64,000 nt of DNA from Octopus sinensis (GCF_006345805.1 NC_042998.1:159774001-159838000); one strand, 5' to 3'; positions 8,822 through 61,342 are shown, counted from the stretch's first letter. Notes: generated by a model from the letters alone, not told the origin. Program-made: numbers and translations.

Positions 8822-9981
8822 CTATACATACAGTACCACCAGCCCTCTTCCTGTCACCAGCCCTCACCTGTTTCAAAGTAAAGTAATATTTTCTCATGTC
8901 CTTCAGAAATGAACAGCACAATAGCTGGACCATGATTTCATGGAAGACTGCAAATGAACAACACTGCTTTTTACATGACAGTCATGTTTCCTTACAAGCA
9001 GCCCATTGTGAAAGAAAAAAGAGACACAAACACAAACATATACACACATTTGGCTATTGTATTATATATAATAATAATAATAAACCATATACCCATTCTT
9101 TTACCTAATATATGAATGCAAGTTATTTTCTGACTCATAGAATTTTGGACAACAACATATATATATATATAAATATATATATATGTATATATATGTATAT
9201 ATATATATATCTTTGTAATTCATTCTAGAATAAACCAGGAACATAACAATTTCACCAGCTATATAAATCTACAACTCTTCAATCTGTAACTAGTTTGATA
9301 AAAGCCAATGCATGAAACTCTCACCCCTTGAGTCATTCTGTTGCTTCTGCTAAATATTAATAAAAATATACATATACTCATATTTTCAGTTCTATTTTTT
9401 CCTGTTTGCATCACCATGTCTATATATTATATACACACACACACACACACCACACATATAAATATATCATCACCATCATCATCATTGTTTACCATCTGCT
9501 TTCCATGCTAGCATAGGTTGGACGATTTGACTGGCTGCACCAGACTCCAATCTGATTTGGCAGAGTTTCTACAGCTGGATGCCCTTCCTAACACCAACCA
9601 CTCCGAGAGTGTAGTGGGTGCTTTTACGTTCCACCGGCATGAGGGCCAGTCAGGTGGTACTGGCAATGGCCATGCTCAAATGGTGCTTTTTATGTGCCAC
9701 CTGCACAGGAGCCAGTCCAGCGGCATTGGCAACGACCTCGCTCGAATGTTTTTTCACATGCCACCAGTACAAGTGCCAGCAAGGTAACGATCACTCTCAA
9801 ATGGTGCTTTTTACATGCCACCAGCATTGAGGCCAGTTTGTTGCTCTGGCAACAATCATGCTCCACTAGCACAGATGCCAGTTATCGAATTTGATTTCGA
9901 TTTTGAATTCACTTGCCTCAACAGGTCTTCGCAAGCAAAGTTTAGTGTCCAATGAAAGAAAGGTACTCATAAGTGGGCTGG

Positions 9982-12900: not shown

Positions 12901-13079
12901 ACATATCGACACACCTCTGTTCAAGCATCTCAACAATCTCACCAGACCTACCTTTCAGTGTGCCAACGTTGAGAGTGCCAACCCAGAGGGTGTGGGAGGT
13001 ATGGGCCCCTTGAGACCCTGGGACGGGGGACAGTAACTTCATGTACCTGAAAAGAAAGCTCGCATTTGACAGAATTCAT
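9982..13079 (-). pseudogene. RTE APE endonuclease plus reverse transcriptase ORF with multiple stops and frameshifts
   Basis: VGTLNVGTLKGRSGE...CIQEVRW; GVHQSSVLSPFLF; LLYADDLALI; FRYLG; RGRPRKTW. Confidence 0.92.
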
Positions 13080-13166
13080 AAACAAACATTAGCATTCAGT
13101 TCAACCTACATACACTACACTATCATATTTTTGCACTATATGATCACTACCTAACATAGGAGATAA

Positions 13167-13337
13167 CCCTAAGTAGGGGTGGGGATGGCGTAAAGCCTTT
13201 AGAAGTGTTCATGGGAGACAACTAAGGGATGACAAAGGATAGGAACTTCCGGTGCAGTGAGAGGGGGTGGGAGTTCGGGCGCACCGCAAACTAGGAAGTT
13301 TAGACGAGAGCATCTTCTGCTTGCGCTGGTTTATATA
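13167..13337 (-). promoter_or_regulatory. Putative RTE copy 1 promoter motifs: CCCTA-NN-TAGGG, ACCGGAAGTT and TATATAAA
   Basis: Motifs at 13167-13178, 13244-13253 and 13330-13337. The first two are conserved in copy 2. Confidence 0.5.
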
Positions 13338-13990
13338 GGGTGGTGGTGGTGCTAGTGCTAGTGCTGGTACTGGTGCTGATGGTGCTGATGGTGCTGGTGG
13401 TGGTGATGCTGGTGCTGGTGGAGGAAGTCTTGGCGAAGCGAGTGGTAATCGAAAGAGCAAGAGACAGACAGAGTGAGGCTGAGAGAGAGACAGACAGACA
13501 GACAAGGTGAGGCTGAGAGAGACAGATAGACAGAGTGAGCTAGAGAGAGAGAGAGGGGAAGTGGGCAAGAACACAAGGGAGGAAAATATTATTTTGGGAT
13601 CTGCGTAGCATAATTTAACGAGACAGCGAATGTTGATAATAGTAAAATAGAATTAAGAAATCTGAGAGTTTTCGGTCAGACAATCTAAGACAAAATCAGA
13701 GTAATAAGTGACTGTGTGATAAAACTTTAATAGATGAATGGATCAATGAATATGTTGCAGTTAAGGAAATACGTGAACTAAGGTTATCTTAAGGGAATAA
13801 CAAGGAAGACAAAACTATTGAAAATTATATTTACATGATGACATGGTACTGAAATAGACAGGATAATGAAAAGAACTAATAGGGGTTTATGATCTGCGCA
13901 GGAATAGAAGAGTAGATGAAATAAGGTTAGTGGACCCTCTTGTCAGCTTAGCCAATAGCTGTTAGACTATCCGCACACCCAGTATAAGCA

Positions 13991-14771: not shown

Positions 14772-15200
14772 TAGGTGCAGGCATGGCTGTGTGGTAAGAA
14801 GCTTGCTTCACAACCACATGGTTTCAGGTTCAGTCCCACTGTGTGGTACCTTGGGCAAGAGTCTTCTACTGTAGTCTCAGGCTGACCAAAGCTTTGTAAG
14901 TGGATTTGGTAGACGAAACTGATAGATAGGTAGGTTTAAGAGACAGAATCACCCTCAAGCAACTCAATCATCATTGAATGACATTATCCACAATATGTAC
15001 ATATAGGACTAAATATTAAAATTATCAAAATTAATACCTACAATTCTTATTCCAAATTATCAAAATTAATACCCGAAACTACATGGTTTCAGGTTCAGTC
15101 CCACTGCATGGCACCTTGGGCAAGTGTCTTCTACTATAAGCATCAGGCCAACCGAAGCTTTGTGAGTGGATTTGGTAGACAGAAACTGAAAGAAGCCTTT
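14772..15200 (+). mobile_element. Two SINE S2 heads (about 14772-14935 and 15075-15200)
   Basis: GGCTGTGTGGTAAG...GGTTCAGTCCCACTG...CCTTGGGCAAG...GGATTTGGTAGAC. Confidence 0.75.
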
Positions 15201-15216
15201 CATATATATGTATATC

Positions 15217-15570
15217 TATCATCATCATCATCATCATCATCGTCGTTTAACATCCATTTTCCATGCTAGCACGGGTTGGACGGTTCTACCGGGGTCTGGT
15301 AAGCCAGGAGGCTGCACCAGGCTCCAGTCTGATCTGGCAGTGTTTCTACAGTTGGATGCCCTTCCTAACGCCAATCACTCCGTGAGTGTAGTGGGTGCTT
15401 TTTACGTGCCACCGACACAGGTGCCAGGGGTGGCTGGCAGTGGCCATGATCAGTTGGTGTTTTTTACGTGCCACCTGTACAGAAGCCAGTCAAGGCGGAG
15501 CTGTCATCGGTCATGTTTGGATGGTGCTTTTTACATGCCACCGTCACAGAAGCCAGTCAATGACTTGTAA
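15217..15570 (-). mobile_element. 5'-truncated RTE 3' end
   Basis: (CAT)n-CGTTTAAC start on the plus strand. Apparent TSD GAAGCC(TA)TTTCATATATATGTATAT near 15193 and 15591. Confidence 0.8.
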
Positions 15571-15917
15571 GTGATTATAATAACTGTGTGGAAGCCTATT
15601 TCATATATATGTATATAAATATATATATATATCATCATCATCATCATCGTCGTTTAACGTCCGTTCTCCATGCTAGCATGGGTTGGACGGTTCGACCGGG
15701 GTTCTGGGAAGCCAGAAGGCTGCACCAGGCTCCAGTCTAATTTGGCAATGTTTCTACAGCTGGATGCCCTCCTAACGCCAACCACTCCGTGAGTGTAGTG
15801 GGTGCTTTTTACGTGCCACCTGCACAGGTGCCAGGCGGGGCTGGCAACGGCCACGGTCAGATTGGTATATTTATGTGCCACCGGCACGGAAGCCAGTCGA
15901 GGCGGTGCTGGCATCGG

Positions 15918-16520
15918 CCACGAGTCGGATAGTGCTTTTTACGTACCACCAGACCAGGGATCCTGGCTGGTTCAATTCGATTTCGATTTCGCTTGCCCCA
16001 ACATGTCTTCACAAGCAAAGGGGTTGGCAAGGGTGCCTGTCGTACGGTCGCATTGGAGTATTTTACGTGCCACGGCCACGAGTCGGATAGTGCTTTACGT
16101 ACCACCAGACCAGGGATACTGGCTGGTTCAATTCGATTTCGATTTCGCTTGCCCCAACATGTCTTCACAAGCAAAGGGGGTTGGCAAGGGTGCCTGTCGT
16201 ACGGTCGCATTGGAGTATTTTACGTGCCACGGCCACGAGTCGGATAGTGCTTTACGTACCACCAGACCAGGGATCCTGGCTGGTTCAATTCGATTTCGAT
16301 TTCGCTTGCCCCAACATGTCTTCACAAGCAAGGGGGTTGGCATGGGTGCCTGTCGTACGGTCGCATTGGAGTATTTTACGTGCCACGGACCCGAGTCGGA
16401 TAGTGCTTTTTACGTACCACCAGGCCAGGGATCCTGGCTGGTTCAATTCGGTTTCGATTTCGATTTCGATTTCGCTTGCCCCAACATGTCTTCGCAAGCA
16501 TGGGGGGTTGGGATGGGTGT
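15918..16520. repeat. ~157-bp tandem repeat, about 4 copies, inside the RTE 3' UTR
   Basis: The unit starting CCACGAGTCGGATAGTGC recurs at 15918, 16076, 16233 and 16390. Confidence 0.9.
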
Positions 16521-16610
16521 CTGTCGTCGGATGAGGTTCTATATCGACTTCGCTTGCCTCAACCGGTCTTTGTGTCCAAGGGAGGAAAGGCATTCATAAG
16601 TGGGCTGGGC

Positions 16611-19600
16611 TCACTTGTCCTGCCTGGTCTTCTCACGTACAGAATATTTCCAAAGGTCTCGGTCTCTGGTCATTTCCTCAGTGAGGCCTAAAGTTCGAAG
16701 GTCGTGCTTCACCACCTCGTCCCAGGTTTTCCTGGGTCTACCTCTTCCACGGGTTCCCTCAACTGCTAGGGATTGGCACTTTCTCACACACCTATCTTCA
16801 TCCATTCTCGCCACATGACCATACCAGCGCAATCGTCTCTCTTGCACACCACAACTGATGCTTCTTAGGTACAACATTTCTCTCAAGGTGCTAACGCTCT
16901 GTCGAGTATGTACACTGACATTACACATCCATCGGAGCATACTGGCTTCATTCCTCACGAGCTTACGCATGTCCTCAGCAGTCACAGCCCATGTTTCGCT
17001 GCCATGTAGCATGGCTGTTCGTACACACGCATCATACAGTCTGCCTTTTACTCTGAGCGAGAGGCCTTTAGTCACCAGCAGAGGTAAGAGCTCCCTAAAC
17101 TTTGCCCAGGCTATTCTTATTCTAGCAGTTACACTTTCAGCGCACCCACCCCCACTACTGACTTGGTCACCTAGATAACGGAAGCTATCAACTACTTCTA
17201 GTTTTTCCCCCTGGAAAGTGACGGAAGTTGTTTTCTGCAGATTTTCGGAGGTTAATGCTCCCGAGCATCTGCCACATACAAAAACTATCTTCCCAGTTAG
17301 CCTACCTTTGACATTGCTGCACCTCTTATGTGTCCATAGCTTACACTGGGTACATCTTATAGAGTTTCTACCTACACCTTTTCTACAGATCGAGCAGGGC
17401 CATCTTCCTGAAGATATTTGTGGATTGTCTACCTTTCTACTTATTAGTACTTTGGTTTTAGCTAGGTTGACTCTAAGGCCCCTTGATTCTAAACCCTCCT
17501 TCCACACCTGGAACTTCTCCTCCAGTTCTGATAGTGACTCAGCAATAAGAGCAAGGTCGTCAGCGTAGAGGAGCTCCCAGGGACAGCCTGTCTTGAATTC
17601 CTCCGTAATTGCCTGGAGTACTATGATAAATAGGAGGGGGCTGAGTACTGAACCCTGGTGGACCCCAACCTCTACTTTGAATTCTTCTGTGTACATGTTG
17701 CCAACCCTAACCTTACTTACGGCATCTCTGTACATGGCTTGCACAGTCCTCACCAGCCATTCATCTATCCCTAGTTTCCTCATTGACCACCAGATAAGGG
17801 ATCGGGGGACCCTATCAAAAGCTTTCTCCATGTCAACGAAAGCTAGGTACAGGGGCTTATCTTTGGCTAGGTATTTCTCCTGCAGCTGCCTTACCAGGAA
17901 TATAGCATCAGTGGTACTTTTTCCTGGCACGAACCCAAACTGCATCTCATCTAAACTAACTCTCTCTCTCTATTAGTTGGGCTATGACCCTCTCCGTAAC
18001 CTTCATTACTTGATCCAACAGCTTGATACCTCTGTAATTATTTGTATCTAGGGCATCACCTTTACCTTTGTAGCAGTTGACTAGTATGCTGCTGCACCAG
18101 TCATTGGGTATGACTCCTTCGTGTATCACCTGGTTGACTATACGGGTGACTAGGTTATAGCCGACACTGCCAGATATTTTGAGCATTTCTGCAGTAATTC
18201 CTGATGGGCCTGGGGCTTTCCCTGTCTTCATGCTTCTAATTGCCTTAGCTACCACGGAACTATCAACTCGGATAGCTGGTCCCTCTGTAGGGTCAACATT
18301 CGGCAGACTCTCTTTATCCCATTCATTTTCCTCATTCAGTAACCTTTCATAGTGGCGTCTCCAAGCTTCTCTCTTTGCATCCTCATTTAGCGCAAGTGAA
18401 CCATCCTCCATGCGAACACATTTCTCTCCTACCACATCACGATTCTCTCTCACACTGTCTTGCAACACGAAATACCTCAAGTCTTTCATCCTCACGGCGC
18501 AGGACATTGGCAAATTTTCTCTTATCTGCTTCCCCTCTGGCTAGATAGACCTGTCTCCTAGCTTCCCTTCTGGCAGTCTGATACCCTTCCCTGCTACCAC
18601 CGTTCTTCCAGGCCTTCCAAGCCTGTTTCTTTTGTCTAATAGCCCTGTCAACAATATTGTTCCAGCCACAGATCTGGTCAGCGGCTTTCAGCAGGTTGTC
18701 CCTCAGAAACGTCCAGTTGTCTTCTACCCCATGTGTAGCTATACCCCCTTCCACTTCGTCAAAGGCTTCAAGTAACATATCTCTAAATCTCTGTCCATTC
18801 GCAGGGGCTTTAAGCTTCCAGACCCTTCTTCTCCATGTTGGTCGTCTTCTAGTCGCCCTCTTAGTCCTGATCCTAAAGTCACTAACTACCAGTCTATGTT
18901 GTGGGGTGCATTCTTCGCCTGGGAAGGTTTTGGCATTTTTAAGCAGCCATCTTTCCCTTTTTCTGGCAAGGATGTAGTCGATTTGGCTAGTATGCCGGCC
19001 CGATCGGTAGGTGACCAGGTGGCTTGTTGGTTTCCTGAAGTTAGTGTTGCAGACCATAAGACTATTCGCATCGCAGAACTCCAGCAGCCTGGTTCCCTCC
19101 TCGTTGCGGGAACCATAACCGTAGCCTCCATGTACGCCATGGAAGCCCCCAGCATGTCGTCCAACATGCCCATTGAAATCACCAGCCACAAAGAGAAGGT
19201 CCCTGTCGTTCGTCGATGAGGTGGTCTGCAGTAGGGTGTCATAGAAACTGTCTTTCTGTCCATCGGGTAGCCCTGGCTGAGGGGCATAGGCCGATATAAT
19301 GGTTGCTAATCTATTATGAAGCACTATTCTAATCTTAAGTATTCTGTCACTTACCTGATTACCTCAATTACTCTATCTATCCATTTCTCAGCGATAATTA
19401 TACCCACCACCAACAACCCGTCAGTGTTCTCTGCCCAGAAAATCTTGTACCTGTGTCCCTTGCCTGTGAGGACCCTAGCAGATCCTCCTCTCCACCTTAT
19501 TTCTTGCATACAACATACATCAACACGTCTCCGTTCAAGCATCTCGACTATCTCGCCAGACCTACCTTTCAATGTGCCAACGTTGAGGGTGCCTACCCTG

Positions 19601-19692
19601 AGGGTGTGGGAGGTGTGGGCCTCTGAGACCCTGGGATGAGGGGCCGCAGTGTTCTGTACCTGAAAAGAAAGCTTGCATTTGCCAGATATCAT
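16611..19692 (-). CDS. RTE APE-RT polyprotein; three apparent frameshifts, all in simple repeats
   Basis: ORF pieces 19351-19692, 18437-19324, 17956-18513 and 16611-17945. Motifs LNVGT, AYAPQ, GDFNGHVG, SQIDYIL, PQHRLV, GVHQGSVLSPLLF, YADDL, FRYLG, GRPRKTW. Confidence 0.85.
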
Positions 19693-19756
19693 ACTGAGAC
19701 TCTAGACTACAACCTGCATAAATTTCAAAGTTTTTGCGCTATATGATCACAATAAA

Positions 19757-19845
19757 CCCTACATAGGGGTGCGGGGGGGGGGTCAAGAAAGATAGAAAAC
19801 AGAAACTTCCGGTTCTGGTAGACGGGTGGGAGGGCGGGGTCACCT
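19757..19845 (-). promoter_or_regulatory. Conserved 5' motifs of RTE copy 2: CCCTA-NN-TAGGG, ETS-like ACCGGAAGTT, GC box
   Basis: CCCTACATAGGG at 19757-19768, AACTTCCGGT at 19804-19813, and GGGCGGGG near 19832. Confidence 0.5.
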
Positions 19846-20203
19846 CCAAGGAACAACAGGTTTTAGTTAATACGTAGGGAATTTTCTGCGACAGAAATTA
19901 CTGAACATCTAGAAACTTCGGGGTTCGAGAAGAATGTAATATAAATAAGAGAGAGAAAATATTTCGTAGGGAATTTAGGGTATCTTTGAACAACAGTTTT
20001 AAGTTAATACGTAGGGAATTTTCTGCGACAGAATTACTGAACATCTAGAAACTTCGGGGTTCGAGAAGAATGTAATATAAATAAGAGAGAAGAAAATATT
20101 TCGTAGGGAATTTAGGGTATCTTTGAACAACAGGTTTTAAGTTAATACGTAGGGAATTTTCTCCGACAGAAATTACTGAACATCTAGAAACTTCGGGGTT
20201 CGA

Positions 20204-20631
20204 TTAAAACATAATATAAATAGGAGAGAGGGAGAATATTGTAGTGAATTCTGGGGATGGAATAACAACGGGATGACACTGAAATTAAAGGAGGAATTTA
20301 AAATGCATGACAGACAGGAAGCCATGCATACAAGATGGCGAAACAACTAATAGAGAAACGGGATTTAGGGTTACGAATCAACGCTTAAAAAATGAATATG
20401 AATGACAGGTTGTAAGTTAAATTCGCTTAGCTGGTCATTTTTCGAGTCAGTGTTTTGTCAGCAAGATGTAGAATCGAGAAGAAGGACGAGATAAATCGAA
20501 CACTGCTTTATAAAGGGTTAGGGATTGGGGGGGGATTATCAGGTGGAAGCATGAGGAAGAGAGGGGGGAAGGAAGAGAGAGAGAGAGAGCTAAGGGACAA
20601 CATGTTTAATTCGTAAGGAATTTTCTGCAAC
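20204..20631 (-). promoter_or_regulatory. Array module 1, putative Pol II promoter unit nearest the ORF
   Basis: TTTATAAA at 20507-20514, CAAGATGGCG at 20331-20340, CAGGAAG just before it, and a GA-rich tract. Confidence 0.5.
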
Positions 20632-22471
20632 AGAAATTACTGAACATCTAGAAACTTCGGGGTTCGAGAAGAATGTAATATAATAAGAGAGAGAGAAAAT
20701 ATTTCGTAGGGAATTTAGGGTATCTTTGAACAACAGGTTTTAGTTAATACGTAGGGAATTTTCTGCGACAGAAATTACTGAACATCTAGAAACTTCGGGG
20801 TTCGAGAAGAATGTAATATAAATAAGAGAGAGAGAAAATATTTCGTAGGGAATTTAGGGTATCTTTGAACAACAGGTTTTAAGTTAATACGTAGGGAATT
20901 TTCTGCGACAGAAATTACTGAACATCTAGAAACTTCGGGGTTCGAGAAGAATGTAATATAAATAAGAGAGAGAGAAATATTTCGTAGGGAATTTAGGGTA
21001 TCTTTGAACAACAGGTTTTAAGTTAACGTAGGGAATTTTCTGCGACAGAAATTACTGAACATCTAGAAACTTCGGGGTTCGAAGAATGTAATATAAATAA
21101 GAGAGAGGAAAATATTTCGTAGGGATTTAGGGTATCTTTGAACAACAGGTTTTAAGTTAATACGTAGGGAATTTTCTGCGACAGAAATTACTGAACATCT
21201 AGAACCTTCGGGGTTCGAGAAGAATGTATATAAATAAGAGAGAGAAAATATTTCGTAGGGAATTTAGGGTATCTTTGAACAACAGGTTTTAAGTTAATAC
21301 GTAGGGAATTTTCTGCGACAGAAATTACTGAACATCTAGAAACTTCGGGGTTCGAGAAGAATGTAATATAAATAAGAGAGAGAGAAAATATTTCGTAGGG
21401 AATTTAGGGTATCTTTGAACAACAGGTTTTAAGTTAATACGTAGGGAATTTTCTGCGACAGAAATTACTGAACATCTAGAAACTTCGGGGTTCGAGAAGA
21501 ATGTAATATAAATAAGAGAGAGAGAAAATTTTCGTAGGGAATTTAGGGTATCTTTGAACAACAGGTTTTAAGTTAATACGTAGGGAATTTTCTGCGACAG
21601 AAATTACTGAACATCTAGAAACTTCGGGGTTCGAGAAGAATGTAATATAAATAAGAGAGAGAGAAAATATTTCGTAGGGAATTAGGGTATCTTTGAACAA
21701 CAGGTTTTAAGTTAATACGTAGGGAATTTTCTGCGACAGAAATTACTGAACATCTAGAAACTTCGGGGTTCGAGAAGAATGTAATATAAATAAGAGAGAG
21801 AAAATATTTCGTAGGGAATTTAGGGTATCTTTGAACAACAGGTTTTAAGTTAATACGTAGGGAATTTTCTGCGACAGAAATTACTGAACATCTAGAAACT
21901 TCGGGGTTCGAGAAGAATGTAATATAAATAAGAGAGAGAGAAAATATTTCGTAGGGAATTTAGGGTATCTTTGAACAACAGGTTTTAAGTTAATACGTAG
22001 GGAATTTTCTGCGACAGAAATTACTGAACATCTAGAAACTTCGGGGTTCGAGAAGAATGTAATATAAATAAGAGAGAGAGAAAATATTTCGTAGGGAATT
22101 TAGGGTATCTTTGAACAACAGGTTTTAAGTTAATACGTAGGGAATTTTCTGCGACAGAAATTACTGAACATCTAGAAACTTCGGGGTTCGAGAAGAATGT
22201 AATATAAATAAGAGAGAGAGAAAATATTTCGTAGGGAATTTAGGGTATCTTTGAACAACAGGTTTTAAGTTAATACGTAGGGAATTTTCTGCGACAGAAA
22301 TTACTGAACATCTAGAAACTTCGGGGTTCGAGAAGAATGTAATATAAATAAGAGAGAGAGAAAATATTTCGTAGGGAATTTAGGGTATCTTTGAACAACA
22401 GGTTTTAAGTTAATACGTAGGGAATTTTCTGCGACAGAAATTACTGAACATCTAGAAACTTCGGGGTTCGA

Positions 22472-22901
22472 TTAAAACATAATATAAATAGGAGAGAGGG
22501 AGAATATTGTAGTGAATTCTGGGGATGGAATAACAACGGGATGACACTGAAATTAAAGGAGGAATTTAAAATGCATGACAGACAGGAAGCCATGCATACA
22601 AGATGGCGAAACAAATAATAGAGAAACGGGATTTAGGGTTACGAATCAACGCTTAAAAAATGATATGAATGACAGGTTGTAAGTTAAATTCGCTTAGCTG
22701 GTCATTTTTCGAGTCAGTGTTTTGTCAGCAAGATGTAGAATCGAGAAGAAGGACGAGATAAATCGAACACTGCTTTATAAAGGGTTAGGGATTGGGGGGG
22801 GATTATCAGGTGGAAGCATGAGAAAGAGAGAGGGGGGAGGAAGAGAGAGAGAGAGAGCTAAGGGACAACATGTTTAATTCGTAAGGAATTTTCTCTGCAA
22901 C
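22472..22901 (-). promoter_or_regulatory. Array module 2
   Basis: Near-identical to module 1. TTTATAAA at 22774-22781, CAAGATGGCG at 22599-22608. Confidence 0.5.
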
Positions 22902-25286
22902 AGAAATTACTGAACATCTAGAAACTTCGGGGTTCGAGAAGAATGTAATATAAATAAGAGAGAGAGAAAATATTTCGTAGGGAATTTAGGGTATCTTTGA
23001 ACAACAGGTTTTAAGTTAATACGTAGGGAATTTTCTGCGACAGAAATTACTGAACATCTAGAACTTCGGGGTTCGAGAAGAATGTAATATAAATAAGAGA
23101 GAGAGAAAATATTTCGTAGGGAATTTAGGGTATCTTTGAACAACAGGTTTTAAGTTAATACGTAGGGAATTTTCTGCGACAGAATTACTGAACATCTAGA
23201 AACTTCGGGTTCGAGAAGAATGTAATATAAATAAGAGAGAGAGAAAATATTTCGTAGGGAATTTAGGGTATCTTTGAACAACAGGTTTTAAGTTAATACG
23301 TAGGGAATTTTCTGCGACAGAAATTACTGAACATCTAGAAACTTCGGGGTTCGAGAAGAATGTAATATAAATAAGAGAGAGAGAAAATATTTCGTAGGGA
23401 ATTTAGGGTATCTTTGAACAACAGTTTTAAGTTAATACGTAGGGAATTTTCTGCGACAGAAATTACTGAACATCTAAACCTTCGGGTTCGAGAAGAATGT
23501 AATATAAATAAGAGAGAGAAAATATTTCGTAGGGAATTTAGGGTATCTTTGAACAACAGGTTTTAAGTTAATACGTAGGGAATTTTCTGCGACAGAAATT
23601 ACTGAACATCTAGAAACTTCGGGGTTCGAGAAGAATGTAATATAAATAAGAGAGAGAGAAATATTTCGTAGGGAATTTAGGGTATCTTTGAACAACAGGT
23701 TTTAAGTTAATACGTAGGGAATTTTCTGCGACAGAAATTACTGAACATCTAGAAACTTCGGGGTTCGAGAAGAATGTAATATAAATAAGAGAGAGAGAAA
23801 ATATTTCGTAGGGAATTTAGGGTATCTTTGAACAACAGGTTTTAAGTTAATACGTAGGGAATTTTCTGCGACAGAAATTACTGAACATCTAGAAACTTCG
23901 GGGTTCGAGAAGAATGTAATATAAATAAGAGAGAGAGAAAATATTTCGTAGGGAATTTAGGGTATCTTTGAACAACAGGTTTTAAGTTAATACGTAGGGA
24001 ATTTTCTGCGACAGAAATTACTGAACATCTAGAAACTTCGGGGTTCGAGAAGAATGTAATATAAATAAGAGAGAGAATATTTCGTAGGGATTTAGGGTAT
24101 CTTTGAACAACAGTTTTAAGTTAATACGTAGGGAATTTTCTGCGACAGAAATTACTGAACATCTAGAAACTTCGGGGTTCGAGAAGAATGTATATAAATA
24201 AGAGAGAGAGAAAATATTTCGTAGGGAATTTAGGGTATCTTTGAACAACAGGTTTTAAGTTAATACGTAGGGATTTTCTGCGACAGAAATTACTGAACAT
24301 CTAGAAACTTCGGGGTTCGAGAAGAATGTAATATAAATAAGAGAGAGAGAAAATATTGTAGGGAATTTAGGGTATCTTTGAACAACAGTTTTAAGTAATA
24401 CGTAGGGAATTTTCTGCGACAGAAATTACTGAACATCTAAAACTTCGGGGTTCGAGAAGAATGTAATATAAATAAGAGAGAGAAAATATTTCGTAGGGAT
24501 TTAGGGTATCTTTGAACAACAGGTTTTAAGTTAATACGTAGGGAATTTTCTGCGACAGAAATTACTGAACATCTAGAAACTTCGGGGTTCGAGAAGAATG
24601 TAATATAAATAAGAGAGAGAGAAAATATTTCGTAGGGAATTTAGGGTATCTTTGAACAACAGGTTTTAAGTTAATACGTAGGGAATTTTCTGCGACAGAA
24701 ATTACTGAACATCTAGAAACTTCGGGGTTCGAGAAGAATGTATATAAATAGAGAGAGAGAAATATTTCGTAGGGAATTTAGGGTATCTTTGAACAACAGG
24801 TTTTAAGTTAATACGTAGGAATTTTCTGCGACAGAAATTACTGAACATCTAGAAACTTCGGGGTTCGAGAAGAATGTAATATAATAAGAGAGAGAGAAAA
24901 TATTTCGTAGGGAATTTAGGGTATCTTTGAACAACAGGTTTTAAGTTAATACGTAGGGAATTTTCTGCGACAGAAATTACTGAACATCTAGAAACTTCGG
25001 GGTTCGAGAAGAATGTAATATAAATAAGAGAGAGAGAAAATATTTCGTAGGGAATTTAGGGTATCTTTGAACAACAGGTTTTAAGTTAATACGTAGGGAA
25101 TTTTCTGCGACAGAATTACTGAACATCTAGAAACTTCGGGGTTCGAGAAGAATGTAATATAAATAAGAGAGAGAGAAAATATTTCGTAGGGAATTTAGGG
25201 TATCTTTGAACAACAGGTTTTAAGTTAATACGTAGGGAATTTTCTCCGACAGAAATTACTGAACATCTAGAAACTTCGGGGTTCGA

Positions 25287-25712
25287 TTAAAACATAATAT
25301 AAATAGGAGAGAGGGAGAATATTGTAGTGAATTCTGGGGATGGAATAACAACGGGATGCACTGAAATTAAAGAGGAATTTAAAATGCATGACAGACAGGA
25401 AGCCATGCATACAAGATGGCGAAACAACAATAGAGAAACGGGATTTAGGGTTACGAATCAACGCTTAAAAAATGAATATGAATGACAGGTTGTAAGTTAA
25501 ATTCGCTTAGCTGGTCATTTTTCGAGTCAGTGTTTTGTCAGCAAGATGTAGAATCGAGAAGAGGACGAGATAAATCGAACACTGCTTTATAAAGGGTTAG
25601 GGATTGGGGGGGGATTATCAGGTGGAAGCATGAGGAAAGAGAGAGAGGGGGGAGGAAGAGAGAGAGAGAGAGCTAAGGACAACATGTTAATTCGTAAGGA
25701 ATTTTCTGCAAC
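25287..25712 (-). promoter_or_regulatory. Array module 3
   Basis: TTTATAAA at 25586-25593, CAAGATGGCG at 25412-25421. Confidence 0.5.
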
Positions 25713-27969
25713 AGAAATTACTGAACATCTAGAAACTTCGGGGTTCGAGAAGAATGTAATATAAATAAGAGAGAGAGAAAATTTTCGTAGGGAATTTAGG
25801 GTATCTTTGAACAACAGGTTTTAAGTTAATACGTAGGGAATTTTCTGCGACAGAAATTACTGAACATCTAGAACTTCGGGTTCGAGAAGAATGTAATATA
25901 AATAAAGAGAGAGAAATATTTCGTAGGGAATTTAGGGTATCTTTGAACAACAGGTTTTAAATTAATACGTAGGGAATTTTCTGCGACAGAAATTACTGAA
26001 CATCTAGAAACTTCGGGGTTCGAGAAGAATGTAATATAAATAAGAGAGAGAGAAAATATTTCGTAGGGAATTTAGGGTATCTTTGAACAACAGGTTTTAA
26101 GTTAATACGTAGGGAATTTTCTGCGACAGAAATTACTGAACATCTAGAAACTTCGGGGTTCGAGAAGAATGTAATATAAATAAGAGAGAGAGAAAATATT
26201 TCGTAGGGAATTTAGGGTATCTTTGAACAACAGGTTTTAAGTTAATACGTAGGGAATTTTCTGCGACAGAAATTACTGAACATCTAGAACCTTCGGGGTT
26301 CGAGAAGAATGTAATATAAATAAGAGAGAGAGAAATATTTCGTAGGAATTTAGGGTATCTTTGAACAACAGTTTTAAGTTAATACGTAGGGAATTTTCTG
26401 CGACAGAAATTACTGAACATCTAGAAACTTCGGGGTTCGAGAAGAATGTAATATAAATAAGAAGAGAGAAAATATTTCGTAGGGAATTTAGGGTATCTTT
26501 GAACAACAGGTTTTAAGTTAATACGTAGGGAATTTTCTGCGACAGAAATTACTGAACATCTAGAAACTTCGGGGTTCGAGAAGAATGTAATATAAATAAG
26601 AGAGAGAGAAAATATTTCGTAGGGATTTAGGGTATCTTTGAACAACAGGTTTTAAGTTAATACGTAGGGAATTTTCTGCGACAGAAATTACTGAACATCT
26701 AGAAACTTCGGGGTTCGAGAAGAATGTAATATAAATAAGAGAGAGAGAAAATATTTCGTAGGGAATTTAGGGTATCTTTGAACAACAGGTTTTAAGTTAA
26801 TACGTAGGGAATTTTCTGCGACAGAAATTACTGAACATCTAGAAACTTCGGGGTTCGAGAAGAATGTAATATAAATAAGAGAGAGAGAAAATATTTCGTA
26901 GGGAATTTAGGGTATCTTTGAACAACAGGTTTTAAGTTAATACGTAGGGAATTTTCTGCGACAGAAATTACTGAACATCTAGAAACTTCGGGGTTCGAGA
27001 AGAATGTAATATAAATAAGAGAGAGAGAAAATATTTCGTAGGGAATTTAGGGTATCTTTGAACAACAGGTTTTAAGTTAATACGTAGGGAATTTTCTGCG
27101 ACAGAAATTACTGAACATCTAGAAACTTCGGGGTTCGAGAAGAATGTAATATAAATAAGAGAGAGAGAAATATTTCGTAGGGAATTTAGGGTATCTTTGA
27201 ACAACAGGTTTTAAGTTAATACGTAGGGAATTTTCTGCGACAGAAATTACTGAACATCTAGAAACTTCGGGGTTCGAGAAGAATGTAATATATAAGAGAG
27301 AGAGAAAATATTTCGTAGGGAATTTAGGGTATCTTTGAACAACAGTTTTAAGTTAATACGTAGGGAATTTTCTGCGACAGAAATTACTGAACATCTAGAA
27401 ACTTCGGGGTTCGAGAAGAATGTAATATAAATAAGAGAGAGAGAAAATATTTCGTAGGGAATTTAGGGTATCTTTGAACAACAGGTTTTAAGTTAATACG
27501 TAGGGAATTTTCTGCGACAGAAATTACTGAACATCTAGAAACTTCGGGGTTCGAGAAGAATGTAATATAAATAAGAGAGAGAAAATATTTCGTAGGGAAT
27601 TTAGGGTATCTTTGAACAACAGGTTTTAAGTTAATACGTAGGGAATTTTCTGCGACAAATTACTGAACATCTAGAAACTTCGGGGTTCGAGAAGAATGTA
27701 ATATAAATAAGAGAGAGAGAAAATATTTCGTAGGGAATTTAGGGTATCTTTGAACAACAGGTTTTAAGTTAATACGTAGGGAATTTTCTGCGACAGAATT
27801 ACTGAACATCTAGAAACTTCGGGGTTCGAGAAGAATGTAATATAAATAAGAGAGAGAGAAAATATTTCGTAGGGAATTTAGGGTATCTTTGAACAACAGG
27901 TTTTAAGTTAATACGTAGGGAATTTTCTCCGACAGAAATTACTGAACATCTAGAAACTTCGGGGTTCGA

Positions 27970-28398
27970 TTAAAACATAATATAAATAGGAGAGAGGGAG
28001 AATATTGTAGTGAATTCTGGGGATGGAATAACAACGGGATGACACTGAAATTAAAGGAGGAATTTAAAATGCATGACAGACAGGAAGCCATGCATACAAG
28101 ATGGCGAAACAACTAATAGAGAAACGGGATTTGGGTTACGAATCAACGCTTAAAAAATGAATATGAATGACAGGTTGTAAGTTAAATTCGCTTAGCTGGT
28201 CATTTTTCGAGTCAGTGTTTTGTCAGCAAGATGTAGAATCGAGAAGAAGGACGAGATAAATCGAACACTGCTTTATAAAGGGTTAGGGATTGGGGGGGGG
28301 ATTATCATGGAAGCATGAGGAAAGAGAGAGGGGGGAAGGAAGAGAGAGAGAGAGAGCTAAGGGACAACATGTTTAATTCGTAAGGAATTTTCTGCAAC
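27970..28398 (-). promoter_or_regulatory. Array module 4
   Basis: TTTATAAA at 28272-28279, CAAGATGGCG at 28097-28106. Confidence 0.5.
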
Positions 28399-30389
28399 AG
28401 AAATTACTGAACATCTAGAAACTTCGGGGTTCGAGAAGAATGTAATATAAATAAGAGAGAGAAAATATTTCGTAGGGAATTTAGGGTATCTTTGAACAAC
28501 AGGTTTTAAGTTAATACGTAGGGAATTTTCTGCGACAGAAATTACTGAACATCTAGAAACTTCGGGGTTCGAGAAGAATGTAATATAAATAAGAGAGAGA
28601 GAAAATATTTCGTAGGGAATTTAGGGTATCTTTGAACAACAGGTTTTAAGTTAATACGTAGGGAATTTTCTGCGACAGAAATTACTGAACATCTAGAAAC
28701 TTCGGGGTTCGAGAAGAATGTAATATAAATAAGAGAGAGAAAATATTTCGTAGGGAATTTAGGGTATCTTTGAACAACAGGTTTTAAGTTAATACGTAGG
28801 GAATTTTCTGCGACAGAAATTACTGAACATCTAGAAACTTCGGGTTCGAGAAGAATGTAATATAAATAAGAGAGAGAGAAAATATTTCGTAGGGAATTTA
28901 GGGTATCTTTGAACAACAGGTTTTAAGTTAATACGTAGGGAATTTTCTGCGACAGAAATTACTGAACATCTAGAACCTTCGGGGTTCGAGAAGAATGTAA
29001 TATAAATAAGAGAGAGAGAATATTTCGTAGGGAATTTAGGGTATCTTTGAACAACAGGTTTTAAGTTAATACGTAGGGAATTTTCTGCGACAGAAATTAC
29101 TGAACATCTAGAAACTTCGGGGTTCGAGAAGAATGTAATATAAATAAGAGAGAGAGAAAATATTTCGTAGGGAATTTAGGGTATCTTTGAACAACAGGTT
29201 TTAAGTTAATACGTAGGGAATTTTCTGCGACAGAAATTACTGAACATCTAGAAACTTCGGGGTTCGAGAAGAATGTAATATAAATAAGAGAGAGAGAAAA
29301 TATTCGTAGGGAATTTAGGGTATCTTTGAACAACAGGTTTTAAGTTAATACGTAGGGAATTTTCTGCGACAGAAATTACTGAACACTAGAAACTTCGGGT
29401 TCGAGAAGAATGTAATATAAATAAGAGAGAGAGAAAATATTTCGTAGGGAATTTAGGGTATCTTTGAACAACAGGTTTTAAGTTAATACGTAGGGAATTT
29501 TCTGCGACAGAAATTACTGAACATCTAGAAACTTCGGGGTTCGAGAAGAATGTAATATAAATAAGAGAGAGAGAAAATATTTCGTAGGGAATTTAGGTAT
29601 CTTTGAACAACAGGTTTTAAGTTAATACGTAGGGAATTTTCTCTGCGACAGAAATTACTGAACATCTAGAAACTTCGGGGTTCGAGAAGAATGTAATATA
29701 AATAAGAGAGAGAGAAAATATTTCGTAGGGAATTTAGGGTATCTTTGAACAACAGGTTTTAAGTTAATACGTAGGGAATTTTCTGCGACAGAAATTACTG
29801 AACATCTAGAAACTTCGGGGTTCGAGAAGAATGTAATATAAATAAGAGAGAGAGAAAATATTTCGTAGGGAATTTAGGGTATCTTTGAACAACAGGTTTT
29901 AAGTTAATACGTAGGGAATTTTCTGCGACAGAAATTACTGAACATCTAGAAACTTCGGGGTTCGAGAAGAATGTAATATAAATAAGAGAGAGAGAAAATA
30001 TTTCGTAGGGAATTTAGGGTATCTTTGAACAACAGGTTTTAAGTTAATACGTAGGGAATTTTCTGCGACAGAAATTACTGAACATCTAGAAACTTCGGGG
30101 TTCGAGAAGAATGTAATATAAATAAGAGAGAGAGAAAATATTTCGTAGGGAATTTAGGGTATCTTTGAACAACAGGTTTTAAGTTAATACGTAGGGAATT
30201 TTCTGCGACAGAAATTACTGAACATCTAGAACTTCGGGGTTCGAGAAGAATGTAATATAAATAAGAGAGAGAGAAATATTTCGTAGGGAATTTAGGGTAT
30301 CTTTGAACAACAGTTTTAAGTTAATACGTAGGGAATTTTCTGCGACAGAAATTACTGAACATCTAGAAACTTCGGGTTCGAGAAGAATG

Positions 30390-30391
<2 letters not shown>

Positions 30392-30481
<90 letters not shown>

Positions 30482-30505
30482 ATATATATTATTATATATA
30501 TATTA

Positions 30506-30562
<57 letters not shown>
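30392..30562. repeat. (TA)n microsatellite closing the array
   Basis: Directly visible; overlaps the last monomer at AATATA. Confidence 0.95.
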
Positions 30563-30564
<2 letters not shown>

Positions 30565-30865
30565 TAACAATTAAGGAACGGCCATAATAGGCCATTCACC
30601 CACTAGAAATAACAGCCAAAGCTTCTACCGCAAATAAAGATTAATTCCGTAAACAGGAGAAAATTAAAAAAACATTACCCTGTAATTTCTTGTACGGTAT
30701 ACCGTTTCATCCGCGGATGAAACGGTATACCGTACAAGAAATTACAGGGTAAATGTTTTTTTAATTTTCTCCTGTTTACGGAATTAATCTTTATTTGCGG
30801 TAGAAGCTTTGGCTGTTATTTCTAGTGGGTGAATGGCCTATTATGGCCGTTCCTTAATTGTTAAT
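30563..30865. repeat. ~303-bp spacerless palindrome centred on CCG|CGG (30713/30714)
   Basis: Arms of 151 and 152 bp that appear to differ by one A. Confidence 0.95.
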
Positions 30866-30970
30866 GTTGAACTTAAAAATGGTCTATGACTATTTAATTT
30901 TTTCCTACTGGGCCGCTGGTGGCAATAAAATTCTACAAAATTTTCCTTGCCACCCTATATTGATTAATTA

Positions 30971-31017
<47 letters not shown>

Positions 31018-31019
31018 CA

Positions 31020-32072
31020 ATGATAAATCTCTGGGATTGGCCACGTTCGGATGGTGCTTTTTACGTACCACTGGCAGAGGTATCACAACTATTATTTCCA
31101 TTTGTTATTTATTTTGATGTTGATGTACTTGACTCAATAGGTCTCTTCAAGCACAGCAGGTCATGTGCCACAGGCACAGAAGCCAGTCAAGGCAGCGCTG
31201 GCATCAGCCATGTTCAGATGGTGCTTTTTACGTGCCGCCGGCACAGGCATCGTAACTACAATTTCCATTTGGTATTTATTTTGATATTGATGTACTTGAC
31301 TCAATAGGTCTCCTCAAGCACAGCAGGTCACCCTACGATCCAAGGTAAGCACAGCAGGTCGTTCTGCAATCCAAGGTACTTTGGATGGGCTGGGGCTATG
31401 TAAAACTGGTGCAGGAAGCAGGCTGAGTCTTTGCAGTCACAGCATATCTCCAGAGATCTCGGTCTTTCATCATTGCCTCTGTGAGGCCTAACGTTCAAAG
31501 GTCATGCTTGACTACCTCGTCCCATGTCTTCCTGGGTCTACCTCTCCCCCTGATACCTTCAACTGTTTGGGAGTGGCACTTCTTCACACATCTCTCCTCA
31601 TCCATCCGCAGTACATGACCATACCAACGCAAACGTCTCTCTTGCACACCACATCTGATGCTTCTTATGTCCAGCATTTCTCTCAGGGTGCTTACACTCT
31701 GTCGTGTGTGCACACTGACATTACACATCCAACGGATCATGCTAGCTTCATTTCTTTAAAGTCTATGCATGTCCTCTGCAGTCACAGCCCATGTTTCACT
31801 ACCGTGAAGCATGGCAGTTTGCACACATGCATCATGCAATCTACCTTTCACTCTGAGTGAGAGACCCTGTGTCACCAGTAGGGGTAGGAGCTTTCTAAAC
31901 TTTGCCCAGGCTATTCGTATTCTAGTGGTGACACTCTCTGAGCATCCACCTCCACTACTAACTTGGTCACCTAGGTAGCGGAAACTATCAACTACTTCTA
32001 GTTTCTCCCGCTGGAGTGTGATGGAATCTGTTTTCTGAGTATCTGTAGTGTCTATTTCCCCTGTGCATCTGC
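31020..32072 (-). mobile_element. RTE fragment (RT C-terminus plus partial 3' UTR) between two (TA)n tracts
   Basis: EKLEVVDSFRYLGDQVSSGGGC...RGRGRPRKTWDEVVKHDL. Confidence 0.88.
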
Positions 32073-32075
32073 CGC

Positions 32076-32119
<44 letters not shown>

Positions 32120-32122
<3 letters not shown>

Positions 32123-32340
32123 ATATGTTTGTATGTCTGTATTTGTCCCCCCAACATTGCTTGACAACCGATGCTGGTGTGTTTACATCCCTGTAACTTA
32201 GCTGTTCGGCAAAAGAGACCAATAGAATAAGTACTAGGCTTACAAAGAATAAGTCCTAGGGTCAATTTGTTCAACTAAAGGCGGTGCTCCAGCATGGCCG
32301 CAGTCAAATGACTAAAAGAAGTAAAAGAGTAAAAGAGTAT
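32120..32340 (+). mobile_element. SINE 3' half (S2 tail) ending in (TAAAAGAG)n
   Basis: TTGACAACCGATGCTGGTGTGTTTAC...CAGCATGGCCGCAGTCAAATGACT. Confidence 0.8.
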
Positions 32341-32965
32341 TATATATCCATTACAGCCAATCTTACCAATAGGTTTTGCACTAGGGGTTCAACAGGGTGT
32401 TAGGTAAAAGCTCAATTATATAACCTTGCACTTCTCAGAATTGGCAGTTACAGAAGAAAACATGGTGACTGCTTTCTCTCTCTATGTGTGTGTAGGGGAG
32501 GGAGAAGATGTGAATGTGCATTTGTATTTGTGTTTGTTCTCCACTCCTGCTTAACAATCTGCAGTGGTTTGTTTACATCCCCATTACCAAGCAGTTCAGT
32601 AAAAGTGACAAATAGAATAAATACCAAACTTAAAACTAGATATTGGGGTCAATTTGTTTGACTAAACCCTTCAATGTGGTTCCCCAGTATCATCACTGAC
32701 CAATCATTGAAACCAATAAAAGATAAAAGATGTATAAAAACGTATAAAAGATATATATGTCTATAATTTATGCTCATACAGCATGAATGACAAGTACTGA
32801 AATAATTCTAATTATTTGAAAAGGAGGCAGTGTTTCCTGATCACAATTTGTTGATCACAATTTCCTGATCACAATTTGTTGATCACTTCACACAGAGAAA
32901 ATATACTTAATCACCTTCCACAACTAATAGCATAGAGTATTCAGCTACTATATACTGTGGTGGCT

Positions 32966-48915: not shown

Positions 48916-48921
48916 GGTAAA

Positions 48922-61149: not shown

Positions 61150-61288
61150 ATAGGTGCAGGTGTGGCTGTGTGGTAAGAAACTTGCTTCCCAACCACATGG
61201 TTCTGCGTTCAGTCCCACAGCATGGCACCTAGGGCAAGTGCCAACTAAAGCCTTGAAAAGTGGACTTGGTAGGCAGAAATAAGCCCCA

Positions 61289-61342
<54 letters not shown>

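What the first reader, a model, noticed from the sequence alone, without database searches (positions are those of the whole stretch)
15631..30396. A near-intact RTE retrotransposon fused to a 10.5-kb higher-order array, bracketed by (TA)n as one unit
Seen: the 5' region passes directly into a partial monomer at 19850/19851. The far end merges into (TA)n through the monomer's own AATATA, and the 3' (GAT)n tail also sits in (TA)n, the same context as the RTE copies at 1692-2519 and 31020-32072. Established: LINEs lose sequence upstream of the transcription start. Rodent L1 solves this with tandem ~200-bp monomers and Drosophila HeT-A by using the neighbouring copy's promoter. I know of no RTE with a two-level monomer-plus-module array. 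Inference: a self-renewing tandem-promoter cassette in which upstream modules transcribe and so copy the downstream ones. Alternatively it is a satellite born from a LINE 5' UTR and expanded in place. This is the best candidate for an undescribed system in the window.
Basis: partly seen in the sequence, partly recalled or inferred. Interest (0 to 1): 0.92.

Follow-up and report, generated by a model that had tools for sequence, protein, structure and literature searches.

The report
Octopus RTE fused to satellite array
A slightly 5'-truncated, defective RTE retrotransposon of an octopus genome is joined head-on to a 10.5-kb two-level satellite array, and both sit inside the (TA)n of one split SINE, so they probably arrived as one chimeric retro-insertion; nothing shows that the array is a promoter.

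Summary
On the minus strand, an RTE-clade LINE (15631-19850) has a (GAT)n tail set in (TA)n. Its 5' UTR runs without any spacer into a 10,546-bp array (19851-30396). The array has 67 monomers of about 140 bp in five modules, separated by four 98-99% identical 'spacers' of about 375 bp, and it ends in (TA)n.

New here: everything from 15219 to 32078 is nested in the internal (TA)n of one composite SINE. The SINE's two halves (15081-15219 and 32081-32347) rejoin colinearly. The array therefore entered a microsatellite that RTEs target repeatedly, and is unlikely to be an old resident satellite block.

RTE-A lacks at least 27 nt of the 5' terminus shared by two relatives, and it has three frameshifts plus a 39-bp deletion. 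The monomer and spacer show no significant similarity to four RTE 5' UTRs, and three related near-full-length copies carry no monomers.

Best reading (about 0.45): one target-primed reverse transcription event carried satellite sequence at the RTE's 5' end, by template switch or 5' transduction, possibly followed by expansion in place. The tandem-promoter cassette is unsupported but not excluded. The source genome could not be searched.

The parts
15081..15219 (+). Head of a composite tRNA-like SINE, 5'-truncated, ending where its internal (TA)n begins. This is the left half of the split target.
   Evidence: 86% identical to positions 47-185 of the O. vulgaris copy L002:23345-23790. Joined to 32079-32360 it aligns colinearly with complete copies.
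15219..15590 (-). RTE 3'-UTR-only copy (extreme 5' truncation, or an RTE-derived SINE) with an (ATC)n tail at its left end. It is flanked by a TSD of about 25 bp, GAAGCC(TA)TTTCATATATATGTATAT.
   Evidence: 87% identical to RTE-A 15631-15950. The TSD matches at 24/26.
15631..19850 (-). RTE-A, an RTE-clade LINE. It comprises the (GAT)n tail (about 15631-15652), a 3' UTR with a 157-bp x3.5 tandem (15915-16462), a broken EN-RT-PHD ORF (16611-19692) and a 158-nt 5' UTR (19693-19850).
   Evidence: ORFs. Pfam Exo_endo_phos, RVT_1 and PHD. Octopus 'craniofacial development protein 2-like' and RT homologues at 83-86%. Lesions. TRF.
19800..19848 (-). Conserved 5' UTR block (GGTG.C.CCCG...ACCGGAAGT, an ETS-like CCGGAAGT) shared by four RTE copies from three genomes. 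It is a candidate internal promoter element (inferred).
   Evidence: Alignment A1. Sequences.
19846..19855 (.). RTE/array junction. In the RTE sense it reads ...CCTGTTGTTC|CTTGGAGGTG.... There is up to 5 nt of ambiguity (TTCCT) relative to RTE-B, and RTE-A lacks the family's 5'-terminal 27 nt or more.
19851..30396 (.). Two-level satellite array: 67 monomers of about 140 bp in 5 modules. Monomer runs are 19851-20229, 20606-22508, 22874-25323, 25686-28006 and 28373-30396. The + strand is purine-rich (G 24%, C 10%).
   Evidence: TRF. Monomer anchors. Consensus. Variants. Composition.
20230..20605 (.). 'Spacer' of module 1. The same unit recurs at 22509-22873, 25324-25685 and 28007-28372. It consists of about 2.5 strongly diverged monomers kept in the 140-bp register.
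   Evidence: The four copies are 98-99% identical. Colinear alignment to a monomer concatemer.
30392..30564 (.). (TA)n into which the last monomer merges at its own TAATATA motif. This is part of the split SINE's internal microsatellite.
30563..30865 (.). Near-perfect palindrome (114-nt arms 100% complementary, plus inner arms). It is another insert in the same (TA)n tract.
31016..32078 (-). 5'-truncated RTE copy flanked by (TA)n on both sides.
   Evidence: 81.6% identical to RTE-A 16639-17278. Sequence.
32081..32347 (+). Microsatellite remainder ((TA)n(TG)n) and second half of the same composite SINE. This is the right half of the split target.
   Evidence: 86% identical to positions 169-436 of the O. 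vulgaris copy. Colinear joined-flank alignment.
9466..13330 (-). RTE-B, a second older near-full-length RTE used as the comparison copy. Its 5' end carries no monomers.
   Evidence: 84% identical to RTE-A over 16610-19750. 5' UTR alignment.

Best explanation
The RTE and the satellite sequence entered this site together, as one chimeric retro-insertion. The RTE endonuclease nicked the internal (TA)n of a SINE, a tract this family hit at least three times at this locus. Reverse transcription started at the (GAT)n tail and copied the RTE RNA to within about 30 nt of its 5' end. It then continued on satellite RNA. That could happen by a template switch, or because the template was a read-through transcript from a donor locus where this truncated RTE already lay next to the satellite (5' transduction). 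The cDNA end was then joined to the (TA)n target at the monomer's own TA-rich motif.

The imported piece held at least one complete module. Unequal exchange in place may then have multiplied and homogenised the modules to the present 10.5 kb. The array is a passenger with no shown function. The RTE copy itself is defective.

Shown: the anatomy, the split SINE, the truncated 5' end, and the lack of monomer/UTR homology. Inferred: RNA-mediated co-arrival, the existence of a donor satellite elsewhere, and later expansion.
For: - Rejoining the flanks 15040-15218 and 32079-32360 rebuilds one colinear composite SINE. All 16.9 kb in between, array included, was therefore inserted into its (TA)n.
- That tract also holds an RTE-tail copy with a 24/26 TSD, a 5'-truncated RTE flanked by (TA)n and a palindrome. 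It is a repeated TPRT target.
- RTE-A's tail sits in (TA)n, but its 5' end abuts a monomer with no (TA)n and no TSD. The outer end of the array does sit in (TA)n.
- RTE-A is 5'-truncated by at least 27 nt relative to RTE-B and an O. bimaculoides copy, with up to 5 nt of junction microhomology. This is the geometry of template-switch chimeras: a foreign copy, then a 5'-truncated LINE, inside one TSD. Such chimeras are reported for RTE-clade LINEs (PMC4476161).
- The array ends inside the monomer's single TA-rich motif, about 11 of 140 nt, as expected for microhomology joining to a (TA)n target.
- The spacers are monomers diverged well beyond what a young insertion site allows, while the regular monomers differ by about 0.3% in substitutions. 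The module architecture therefore predates this site and was imported.
Against: - The TSD of the proposed unit is only (TA)n, so it cannot be verified.
- A 14.7-kb cDNA is very long for a LINE RT, so later in-place expansion has to be assumed.
- No second copy of the satellite, donor locus or sense-strand satellite transcript could be looked for, because the source genome is not in any searchable collection.
- Full-length relatives (RTE-B, L001, L002) do not have long (TA)n at their 5' flanks. A missing (TA)n at an RTE 5' end is therefore not in itself unusual.
- The junction rests on a single assembly that shows indel noise.
Confidence: 0.45

Rival explanations
1. Two independent events. A satellite block got into the (TA)n by a DNA-level route (for example reintegration of extrachromosomal satellite circles at a fragile microsatellite) or grew there. 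RTE-A later inserted into the (TA)n at its left edge. The 5' joining step removed the remaining (TA)n and part of the first module (target-site deletion).
For: - RTE and RTE-tail insertions are very dense here: at least 6 in 64 kb.
- The RTE-proximal module is cut to 2.8 monomers and the RTE is 5'-truncated with no TSD, as in deletion-associated LINE insertions.
- Full-length relatives also lack (TA)n at their 5' flank.
- The monomer is unrelated to RTE sequence.
Against: - It needs a separate, rarer mechanism to place a satellite inside a SINE's microsatellite.
- It also needs the RTE to land exactly at the array's edge, or to delete all intervening (TA)n.
- No array remnant lies on the other side of RTE-A.
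Confidence: 0.28
2. The monomer-plus-module array is the regular 5' promoter region of this RTE subfamily, functionally like the tandem monomers of rodent L1. Upstream modules would start transcripts that include, and so renew, downstream modules.
For: - The geometry fits: tandem units directly upstream of the ORF, and the whole unit bracketed by the family's (TA)n target.
- RTE-A's 5' UTR differs from its relatives between the conserved block and the ATG, so it may belong to a distinct subfamily whose other members were not seen.
- RTE-A also carries a 157-bp x3.5 tandem in its 3' UTR.
Against: - Three relatives (84-93% identical in the ORF, from three genomes) have no monomers.
- The RTE is truncated at the junction and keeps the conserved CCGGAAGT block that probably belongs to its own promoter.
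- No monomer/UTR homology.
- 67 monomers with diverged-monomer spacers look like satellite evolution rather than a LINE 5' end.
- In the RTE sense, the only TATA-like motif lies 45 nt from the only TCAGT, which is not a canonical spacing.
- No ribozyme or other known RNA family was found.
- Translated monomers match nothing in a database of 5.8 billion proteins that includes transcriptome-derived ORFs.
Confidence: 0.1
3. The satellite was born in place from the RTE's own 5' UTR and expanded at this locus.
For: The array abuts the 5' UTR directly. The regular monomers are nearly identical, which fits recent local expansion.
Against: - Local alignments of monomer and spacer against four RTE 5' UTRs, on both strands, score no better than shuffles.
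- The spacers are old, diverged monomers. That is hard to fit inside a site younger than the SINE and next to a still nearly open RTE ORF.
Confidence: 0.03
4. Assembly artefact. The junction at 19850/19851, or the length and module count of the array, comes from misjoined or over-expanded noisy long reads.
For: - Differences among monomers and spacers are dominated by 1-2-bp indels in base runs.
- A 100% perfect palindrome lies 170 bp beyond the array.
- RTE-A's frameshifts are small indels.
Against: - The modules share true substitutions at fixed positions.
- Both outer junctions fit a coherent split-SINE picture.
- The junction shows no duplicated or inverted sequence.
Confidence: 0.08

Closest known systems
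Template-switch chimeric retro-insertions of LINEs (U6/L1 chimeras; U6 chimeras of L2- and RTE-clade LINEs; Magnaporthe MGL/MINE chimeras)
   Same: A foreign sequence is fused to the 5' side of a 5'-truncated LINE copy, and the whole sits at the LINE endonuclease's target as one insertion. RTE-clade reverse transcriptases are reported to make such chimeras (PMC4476161; PMC2104539).
   Different: Here the foreign part is a tandem satellite of 10.5 kb rather than a small RNA of about 100 nt. The TSD is uninformative (TA)n. Part of the length may be due to later expansion. The RNA origin of the satellite part is inferred, not shown.
LINE 5' transduction (read-through from an upstream promoter carries flanking DNA with the element); own knowledge of L1 biology
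   Same: Upstream flanking DNA is co-mobilised at the 5' end and enclosed in the same target site.
   Different: Known cases carry unique flanks, usually under 1-2 kb. No donor locus is known here.
Tandem 5' monomers of mouse and rat L1 (A, F and Tf types, about 200 bp); own knowledge
   Same: Head-to-tail units lie directly upstream of a LINE ORF.
   Different: L1 monomers occur in all full-length members of a subfamily, number a few to about a dozen, have shown promoter activity and join a defined non-monomeric linker. Here there is one copy with 67 monomers plus diverged-monomer spacers. The relatives lack them, and the LINE is truncated at the junction.
Satellite arrays spread by or derived from mobile elements in molluscs and insects (Helentron-borne satDNA-like repeats in Crassostrea gigas, PMC7492417; Tetris in Drosophila virilis, PMC4079207)
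   Same: A satellite-like array lies outside heterochromatin, next to a mobile element, in a mollusc genome.
   Different: In those cases the repeats lie between the defined ends of a DNA transposon or Helitron-type element. Here both array ends are cut monomers with no unique arms, and the partner is a non-LTR retrotransposon.
Octopus RTE LINEs (RTE-2_OV of O. vulgaris, an O. bimaculoides RTE; PMC9115989). 13 recently active RTE families are reported in O. vulgaris (PMC13282606).
   Same: Same clade and host genus: a single EN-RT ORF with a microsatellite-bearing 3' end. The nearest proteins are from O. bimaculoides and O. vulgaris (83-86% identity).
   Different: The passages I read of those papers (keyword look-ups) mention no tandem 5' array. 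RTE-2_OV is described with UTRs of about 600 nt, whereas RTE-A has a 158-nt 5' UTR before the array.

Membership tests
RTE-clade non-LTR retrotransposon | Single ORF encoding an apurinic-type endonuclease followed by a reverse transcriptase, with no ORF1 | tested here: met
   Exo_endo_phos/Exo_endo_phos_2 and RVT_1 in consecutive ORF pieces over 19692-16611. Only 158 nt lie upstream of the ATG.
RTE-clade non-LTR retrotransposon | 3' end is a short simple-repeat tail rather than poly(A) | tested here: met
   (GAT)n tail at 15631-15652. The same tail is seen on RTE-B and on the tail-only copies. Microsatellite 3' ends are noted as common in RTE elements (PMC9115989).
RTE-clade non-LTR retrotransposon | Phylogenetic placement of the RT within the RTE clade | not tested
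   No tree was built. The nearest named hits are octopus 'craniofacial development protein 2-like' and RT-domain proteins.
LINE with tandem 5' promoter monomers (rodent L1 type) | Tandem units directly upstream of the ORF | tested here: met
   Monomers start 158 nt upstream of the ATG.
LINE with tandem 5' promoter monomers (rodent L1 type) | Monomers present at the 5' end of other full-length members | tested here: not met
   RTE-B (same window), L001 (O. bimaculoides) and L002 (O. vulgaris) reach the conserved 5' block and carry no monomers. No member of RTE-A's own subfamily was available.
LINE with tandem 5' promoter monomers (rodent L1 type) | Monomers have sense-strand promoter activity | not testable with these tools
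   No expression data. Motif spacing is non-canonical.
Chimeric retro-insertion (template switch or 5' transduction) | Foreign sequence fused directly to the 5' side of a 5'-truncated LINE | tested here: met
   Junction at 19850/19851. At least 27 nt of the family's 5' end are missing.
Chimeric retro-insertion (template switch or 5' transduction) | The whole unit is bounded by one target-site duplication at the endonuclease's target | tested here: inconclusive
   Both outer ends lie in the (TA)n of one split SINE. A TSD made of (TA)n cannot be verified.
Chimeric retro-insertion (template switch or 5' transduction) | The foreign part has a transcribed source elsewhere in the genome | not testable with these tools
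   The source genome is not searchable. Monomer scans of the metagenome and prokaryote collections, and a protein search with the translated monomer, found nothing.
Satellite DNA with higher-order structure | Head-to-tail monomers plus a longer period marked by diagnostic variants | tested here: met
   67 monomers. Four spacers at 98-99% identity. Fixed first and last monomer variants, and a shared A>C in monomer 5.
Satellite DNA with higher-order structure | Family present as arrays at other loci | not testable with these tools
   None in the remaining 53 kb of the window or in 90 kb of other octopus loci.
Helitron/Helentron-borne satellite (mollusc type) | Repeats enclosed by unique left and right element arms with defined termini | tested here: not met
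   Both array ends are cut monomers, one at the RTE junction and one at (TA)n. The only non-monomer stretch, the spacer, aligns in register as diverged monomers.

The most novel reading that the evidence does not exclude
RTE-A represents an octopus RTE subfamily whose regular 5' region is a heritable, two-level tandem array that serves as a renewable promoter. Upstream modules would start transcripts that carry downstream modules along. This would be the first monomer-type 5' promoter in the RTE clade, and far larger than those of rodent L1.
Probability: 0.1. Interest if true: 0.8.

Novelty: new variant of a known kind. Interest (0 to 1): 0.45.

Why it matters
If RTE and array did arrive together, this locus shows that a non-LTR retrotransposon can carry kilobases of satellite DNA into a new euchromatic site. 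That would be a concrete route for seeding satellite arrays around a genome, in a lineage (octopus) whose RTE elements are under active study. It also yields a clean, testable empty site: one SINE with an uninterrupted (TA)n. If the rarer promoter-cassette reading were true, it would add a new solution to the problem of how LINEs keep a promoter. As it stands, this is a single locus whose function is unshown.

Tried and rejected
- Monomer or spacer derived from an RTE 5' UTR. Local alignments against four UTRs, on both strands, scored no better than shuffles. The resemblance GAACCCCGAAGTTTCT / GAACCGGAAGTTTCT that I saw by eye is within chance.
- Finding the satellite elsewhere. Exact-pattern scans of metagenome contigs (two patterns) and genome contigs gave 0 hits. 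A protein search with a 124-aa monomer ORF gave nothing. There is no monomer in the rest of the window or in L001-L004.
- Finding the source assembly. Two window ORFs are not on record. The best octopus proteins are only 83-86% identical, so the species stays undetermined within Octopus or close relatives.
- The 55-bp x3 tandem just upstream of the O. vulgaris RTE copy (L002:23785-23964) as evidence that relatives carry 5' monomers. It matches nothing else. Homology between L002 and RTE-B already ends about 125 bp downstream of it. It may therefore be flanking DNA, and I do not use it as evidence.
- Ribozyme-processed 5' end (HDV-like, twister or hammerhead, as in some non-LTR elements). Rfam at E<=1 over 15000-23000 found only a chance lncRNA hit.
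- Helitron-type carrier. There are no unique arms.
- Promoter motifs in the monomer. Nothing canonical on the RTE-sense strand. The only perfect TATAAATA lies on the opposite strand.

Full report
**What is there**

The window is octopus DNA. The nearest proteins to the element's reading frames are from Octopus bimaculoides, O. vulgaris and O. sinensis, at 66-86% identity. The species itself could not be fixed, because two window ORFs are not on record in the assembly index.

An RTE-type LINE, here called RTE-A, lies on the minus strand.
- Its (GAT)n tail begins at 15631-15633, directly after (TA)n.
- Its 3' UTR contains a 157-bp unit repeated 3.5 times at 15915-16462.
- Its reading frame, with endonuclease, reverse transcriptase and a PHD-like finger, runs from 19692 to 16611 in four pieces.
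- Compared with two relatives it has a 1-bp deletion near 19354, a 39-bp in-frame deletion near 18661, a 2-bp deletion near 18455 and a 1-bp insertion near 17971. 'Near-intact' is fair, but the copy as assembled is defective.

**The array**

From 19851 to 30396 there are 67 monomer starts with a 140-bp consensus. Four gaps of about 465 bp divide them into modules of 2.8, 13.7, 17.7, 16.7 and 14.6 monomers.

Each gap holds a 'spacer' of about 375 bp, and the four spacers are 98-99% identical. Every full module opens with the same variant monomer (TTAATTCGTAAGG...GCAACAG), closes with the same variant (TTCTCCGACAG), and carries the same A>C change in its fifth monomer. The two-level structure is therefore real and reflects duplication of whole modules.

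The spacer aligns colinearly, in the 140-bp register, to a monomer concatemer, but only weakly. It is about 2.5 old, strongly diverged monomers. The regular monomers differ by 27 substitutions and 90 indel columns in 8126 positions. The excess of indels, which fall in base runs, looks like long-read consensus noise, so true divergence is about 0.3% or less.

The 5' UTR passes into a monomer at 19850/19851 with nothing in between. The last monomer ends GAATGTAATATA and continues as 170 bp of (TA)n.

**The new and most informative result: a split SINE**

A composite SINE of about 440 bp has a tRNA-like head, an internal (TA)n(TG)n and a second half. It occurs complete in O. vulgaris (L002:23345-23790) and in this window (54287-54698 and 61150-61555). 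Near the finding it is split. Its head is at 15081-15219 and its second half at 32081-32347, on the same strand and in the right order. Joining 15040-15218 to 32079-32360 gives a colinear copy.

Everything from 15219 to 32078 was therefore inserted into that one microsatellite:
- an RTE-tail copy with a 24/26 TSD;
- RTE-A;
- the array;
- a perfect palindrome;
- a 5'-truncated RTE flanked by (TA)n.

The array is thus unlikely to be an old resident satellite block at whose edge an RTE happened to land. It entered a tract that this RTE family targets again and again.

**Is the array part of the RTE family?**

The window holds a second near-full-length copy, RTE-B (9466 to about 13330), 84% identical to RTE-A. 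I also fetched an O. bimaculoides copy (L001) and an O. vulgaris copy (L002, 90-93% identical in the ORF).

All four copies share a conserved 5' UTR block containing CCGGAAGT. Upstream of it, RTE-B and L001 share a further 27 nt (CAGAAGATGCTCTCGTCTAAA...) that RTE-A lacks. None of the three relatives has monomers.

RTE-A is therefore slightly 5'-truncated at the junction, with at most 5 nt (TTCCT) of ambiguity. Monomer and spacer have no similarity to any of the four 5' UTRs beyond shuffled controls, and nothing like them occurs in the other 53 kb of the window or in 90 kb of other octopus loci. No ribozyme or other known RNA family was found.

**How it most likely came about**

The geometry is a foreign sequence, then a 5'-truncated LINE, with the outer ends in the endonuclease's target. 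That is the geometry of template-switch chimeras, which have been described for RTE-clade LINEs among others (PMC4476161; also PMC2104539). A read-through transcript from a donor locus (5' transduction) would give the same picture.

The outer end falls in the monomer's only TA-rich motif, about 11 of 140 nt. This fits microhomology joining to a (TA)n target, although growth of (TA)n from that motif would look the same.

The spacers are far more diverged from the monomer than a site younger than this SINE allows. At least one full module must therefore have been imported ready-made from a satellite elsewhere. The near-identity of modules leaves room for later multiplication in place, which would also ease the problem of a 14.7-kb cDNA. 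I put this at about 0.45.

**Rivals**

- The main rival (about 0.28) is two events: a DNA-level arrival of the satellite in the (TA)n, followed by an RTE insertion at its edge with loss of the remaining (TA)n. In its favour, full-length relatives also lack long (TA)n at their 5' flanks, so that feature alone is weak.
Relatives lack monomers, the RTE is cut at the junction and keeps its own conserved block, motif spacing is non-canonical, and translated monomers match nothing in a very large protein database.
- Birth in place from the 5' UTR (about 0.03) is contradicted.
- An assembly artefact (about 0.08) cannot be excluded without reads.

**What could not be done**

The decisive test is a genome-wide search for monomer, spacer and junction in the source species. 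It was impossible because no searchable collection holds that genome. The octopus TE papers I consulted by keyword look-up describe RTE elements, but the passages I read mention no 5' array (PMC9115989, PMC13282606).

**Verdict**

'One unit' is supported, 'promoter cassette' is unsupported, and '5' UTR origin' is not supported. This is a new variant of known kinds (chimeric LINE insertion; TE-associated satellite). It is of moderate interest, and that could rise sharply if the same junction recurs across the genome.

Noticed in passing
window 30563-30865: A near-perfect palindrome: 114-nt arms 100% complementary, with inner arms at 91% meeting at 30713/30714. It sits between two (TA)n tracts 170 bp beyond the array. 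It could be a foldback-type insert or a long-read artefact.
   Followed up: partly
window 15915-16462 (compare 9890-9981 in RTE-B): RTE-A's 3' UTR carries a 157-bp unit repeated 3.5 times at 91-96% identity. Only short (45-86 bp) matches to this unit were found in RTE-B. The RTE-A copy or its lineage therefore also expanded a UTR segment in tandem.
   Followed up: partly
L002:23785-23964 (O. vulgaris, OX597818.1): A 55-bp unit repeated about 3 times lies directly after (TA)n, about 320 bp upstream of the conserved 5' block of an RTE copy that is 90-93% identical to RTE-A. It matches nothing else that I held. It is unclear whether it belongs to that RTE's 5' end or to the flank.
   Followed up: partly
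window 19800-19848 (-), 13240-13300 (-); L001:9790-9840; L002:24095-24145: A conserved GGTGCGCCCG...ACCGGAAGT block (an ETS-like site) is the best-kept part of the 5' UTR in four RTE copies from three genomes, while the sequence upstream of it differs in each. It is a candidate internal promoter element.
   Followed up: partly
window 15081-15219 / 32081-32347; complete copies 54287-54698, 61150-61555, 48337-48924: A composite SINE family with an internal (TA)n(TG)n microsatellite. This internal tract, rather than generic (TA)n, appears to be the nest for RTE insertions at this locus and in L002.
   Followed up: yes
window 16611-17945 (-), residues 184-227: The RTE ORF carries a PHD-like or C1-like cysteine-rich finger after the RT domain (Pfam PF00628, below the curated cut-off). 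Many marine-invertebrate homologues share it.
   Followed up: no
window 1108-1318, 2155-2348; L002:23031-23161; L003:9051-9333: The RTE 3'-UTR/SINE-like region is itself built of 61-63-bp tandem sub-repeats (…GGTGGCACATAAAA…), with copy number varying between insertions.
   Followed up: no
window 13330-13560: Directly beyond RTE-B's 5' end lie a (GGTGCT)n-like tract and an (AGAC)n/(GAGA)n-rich 28-32-bp repeat. These are unrelated to the 140-bp monomer.
   Followed up: no
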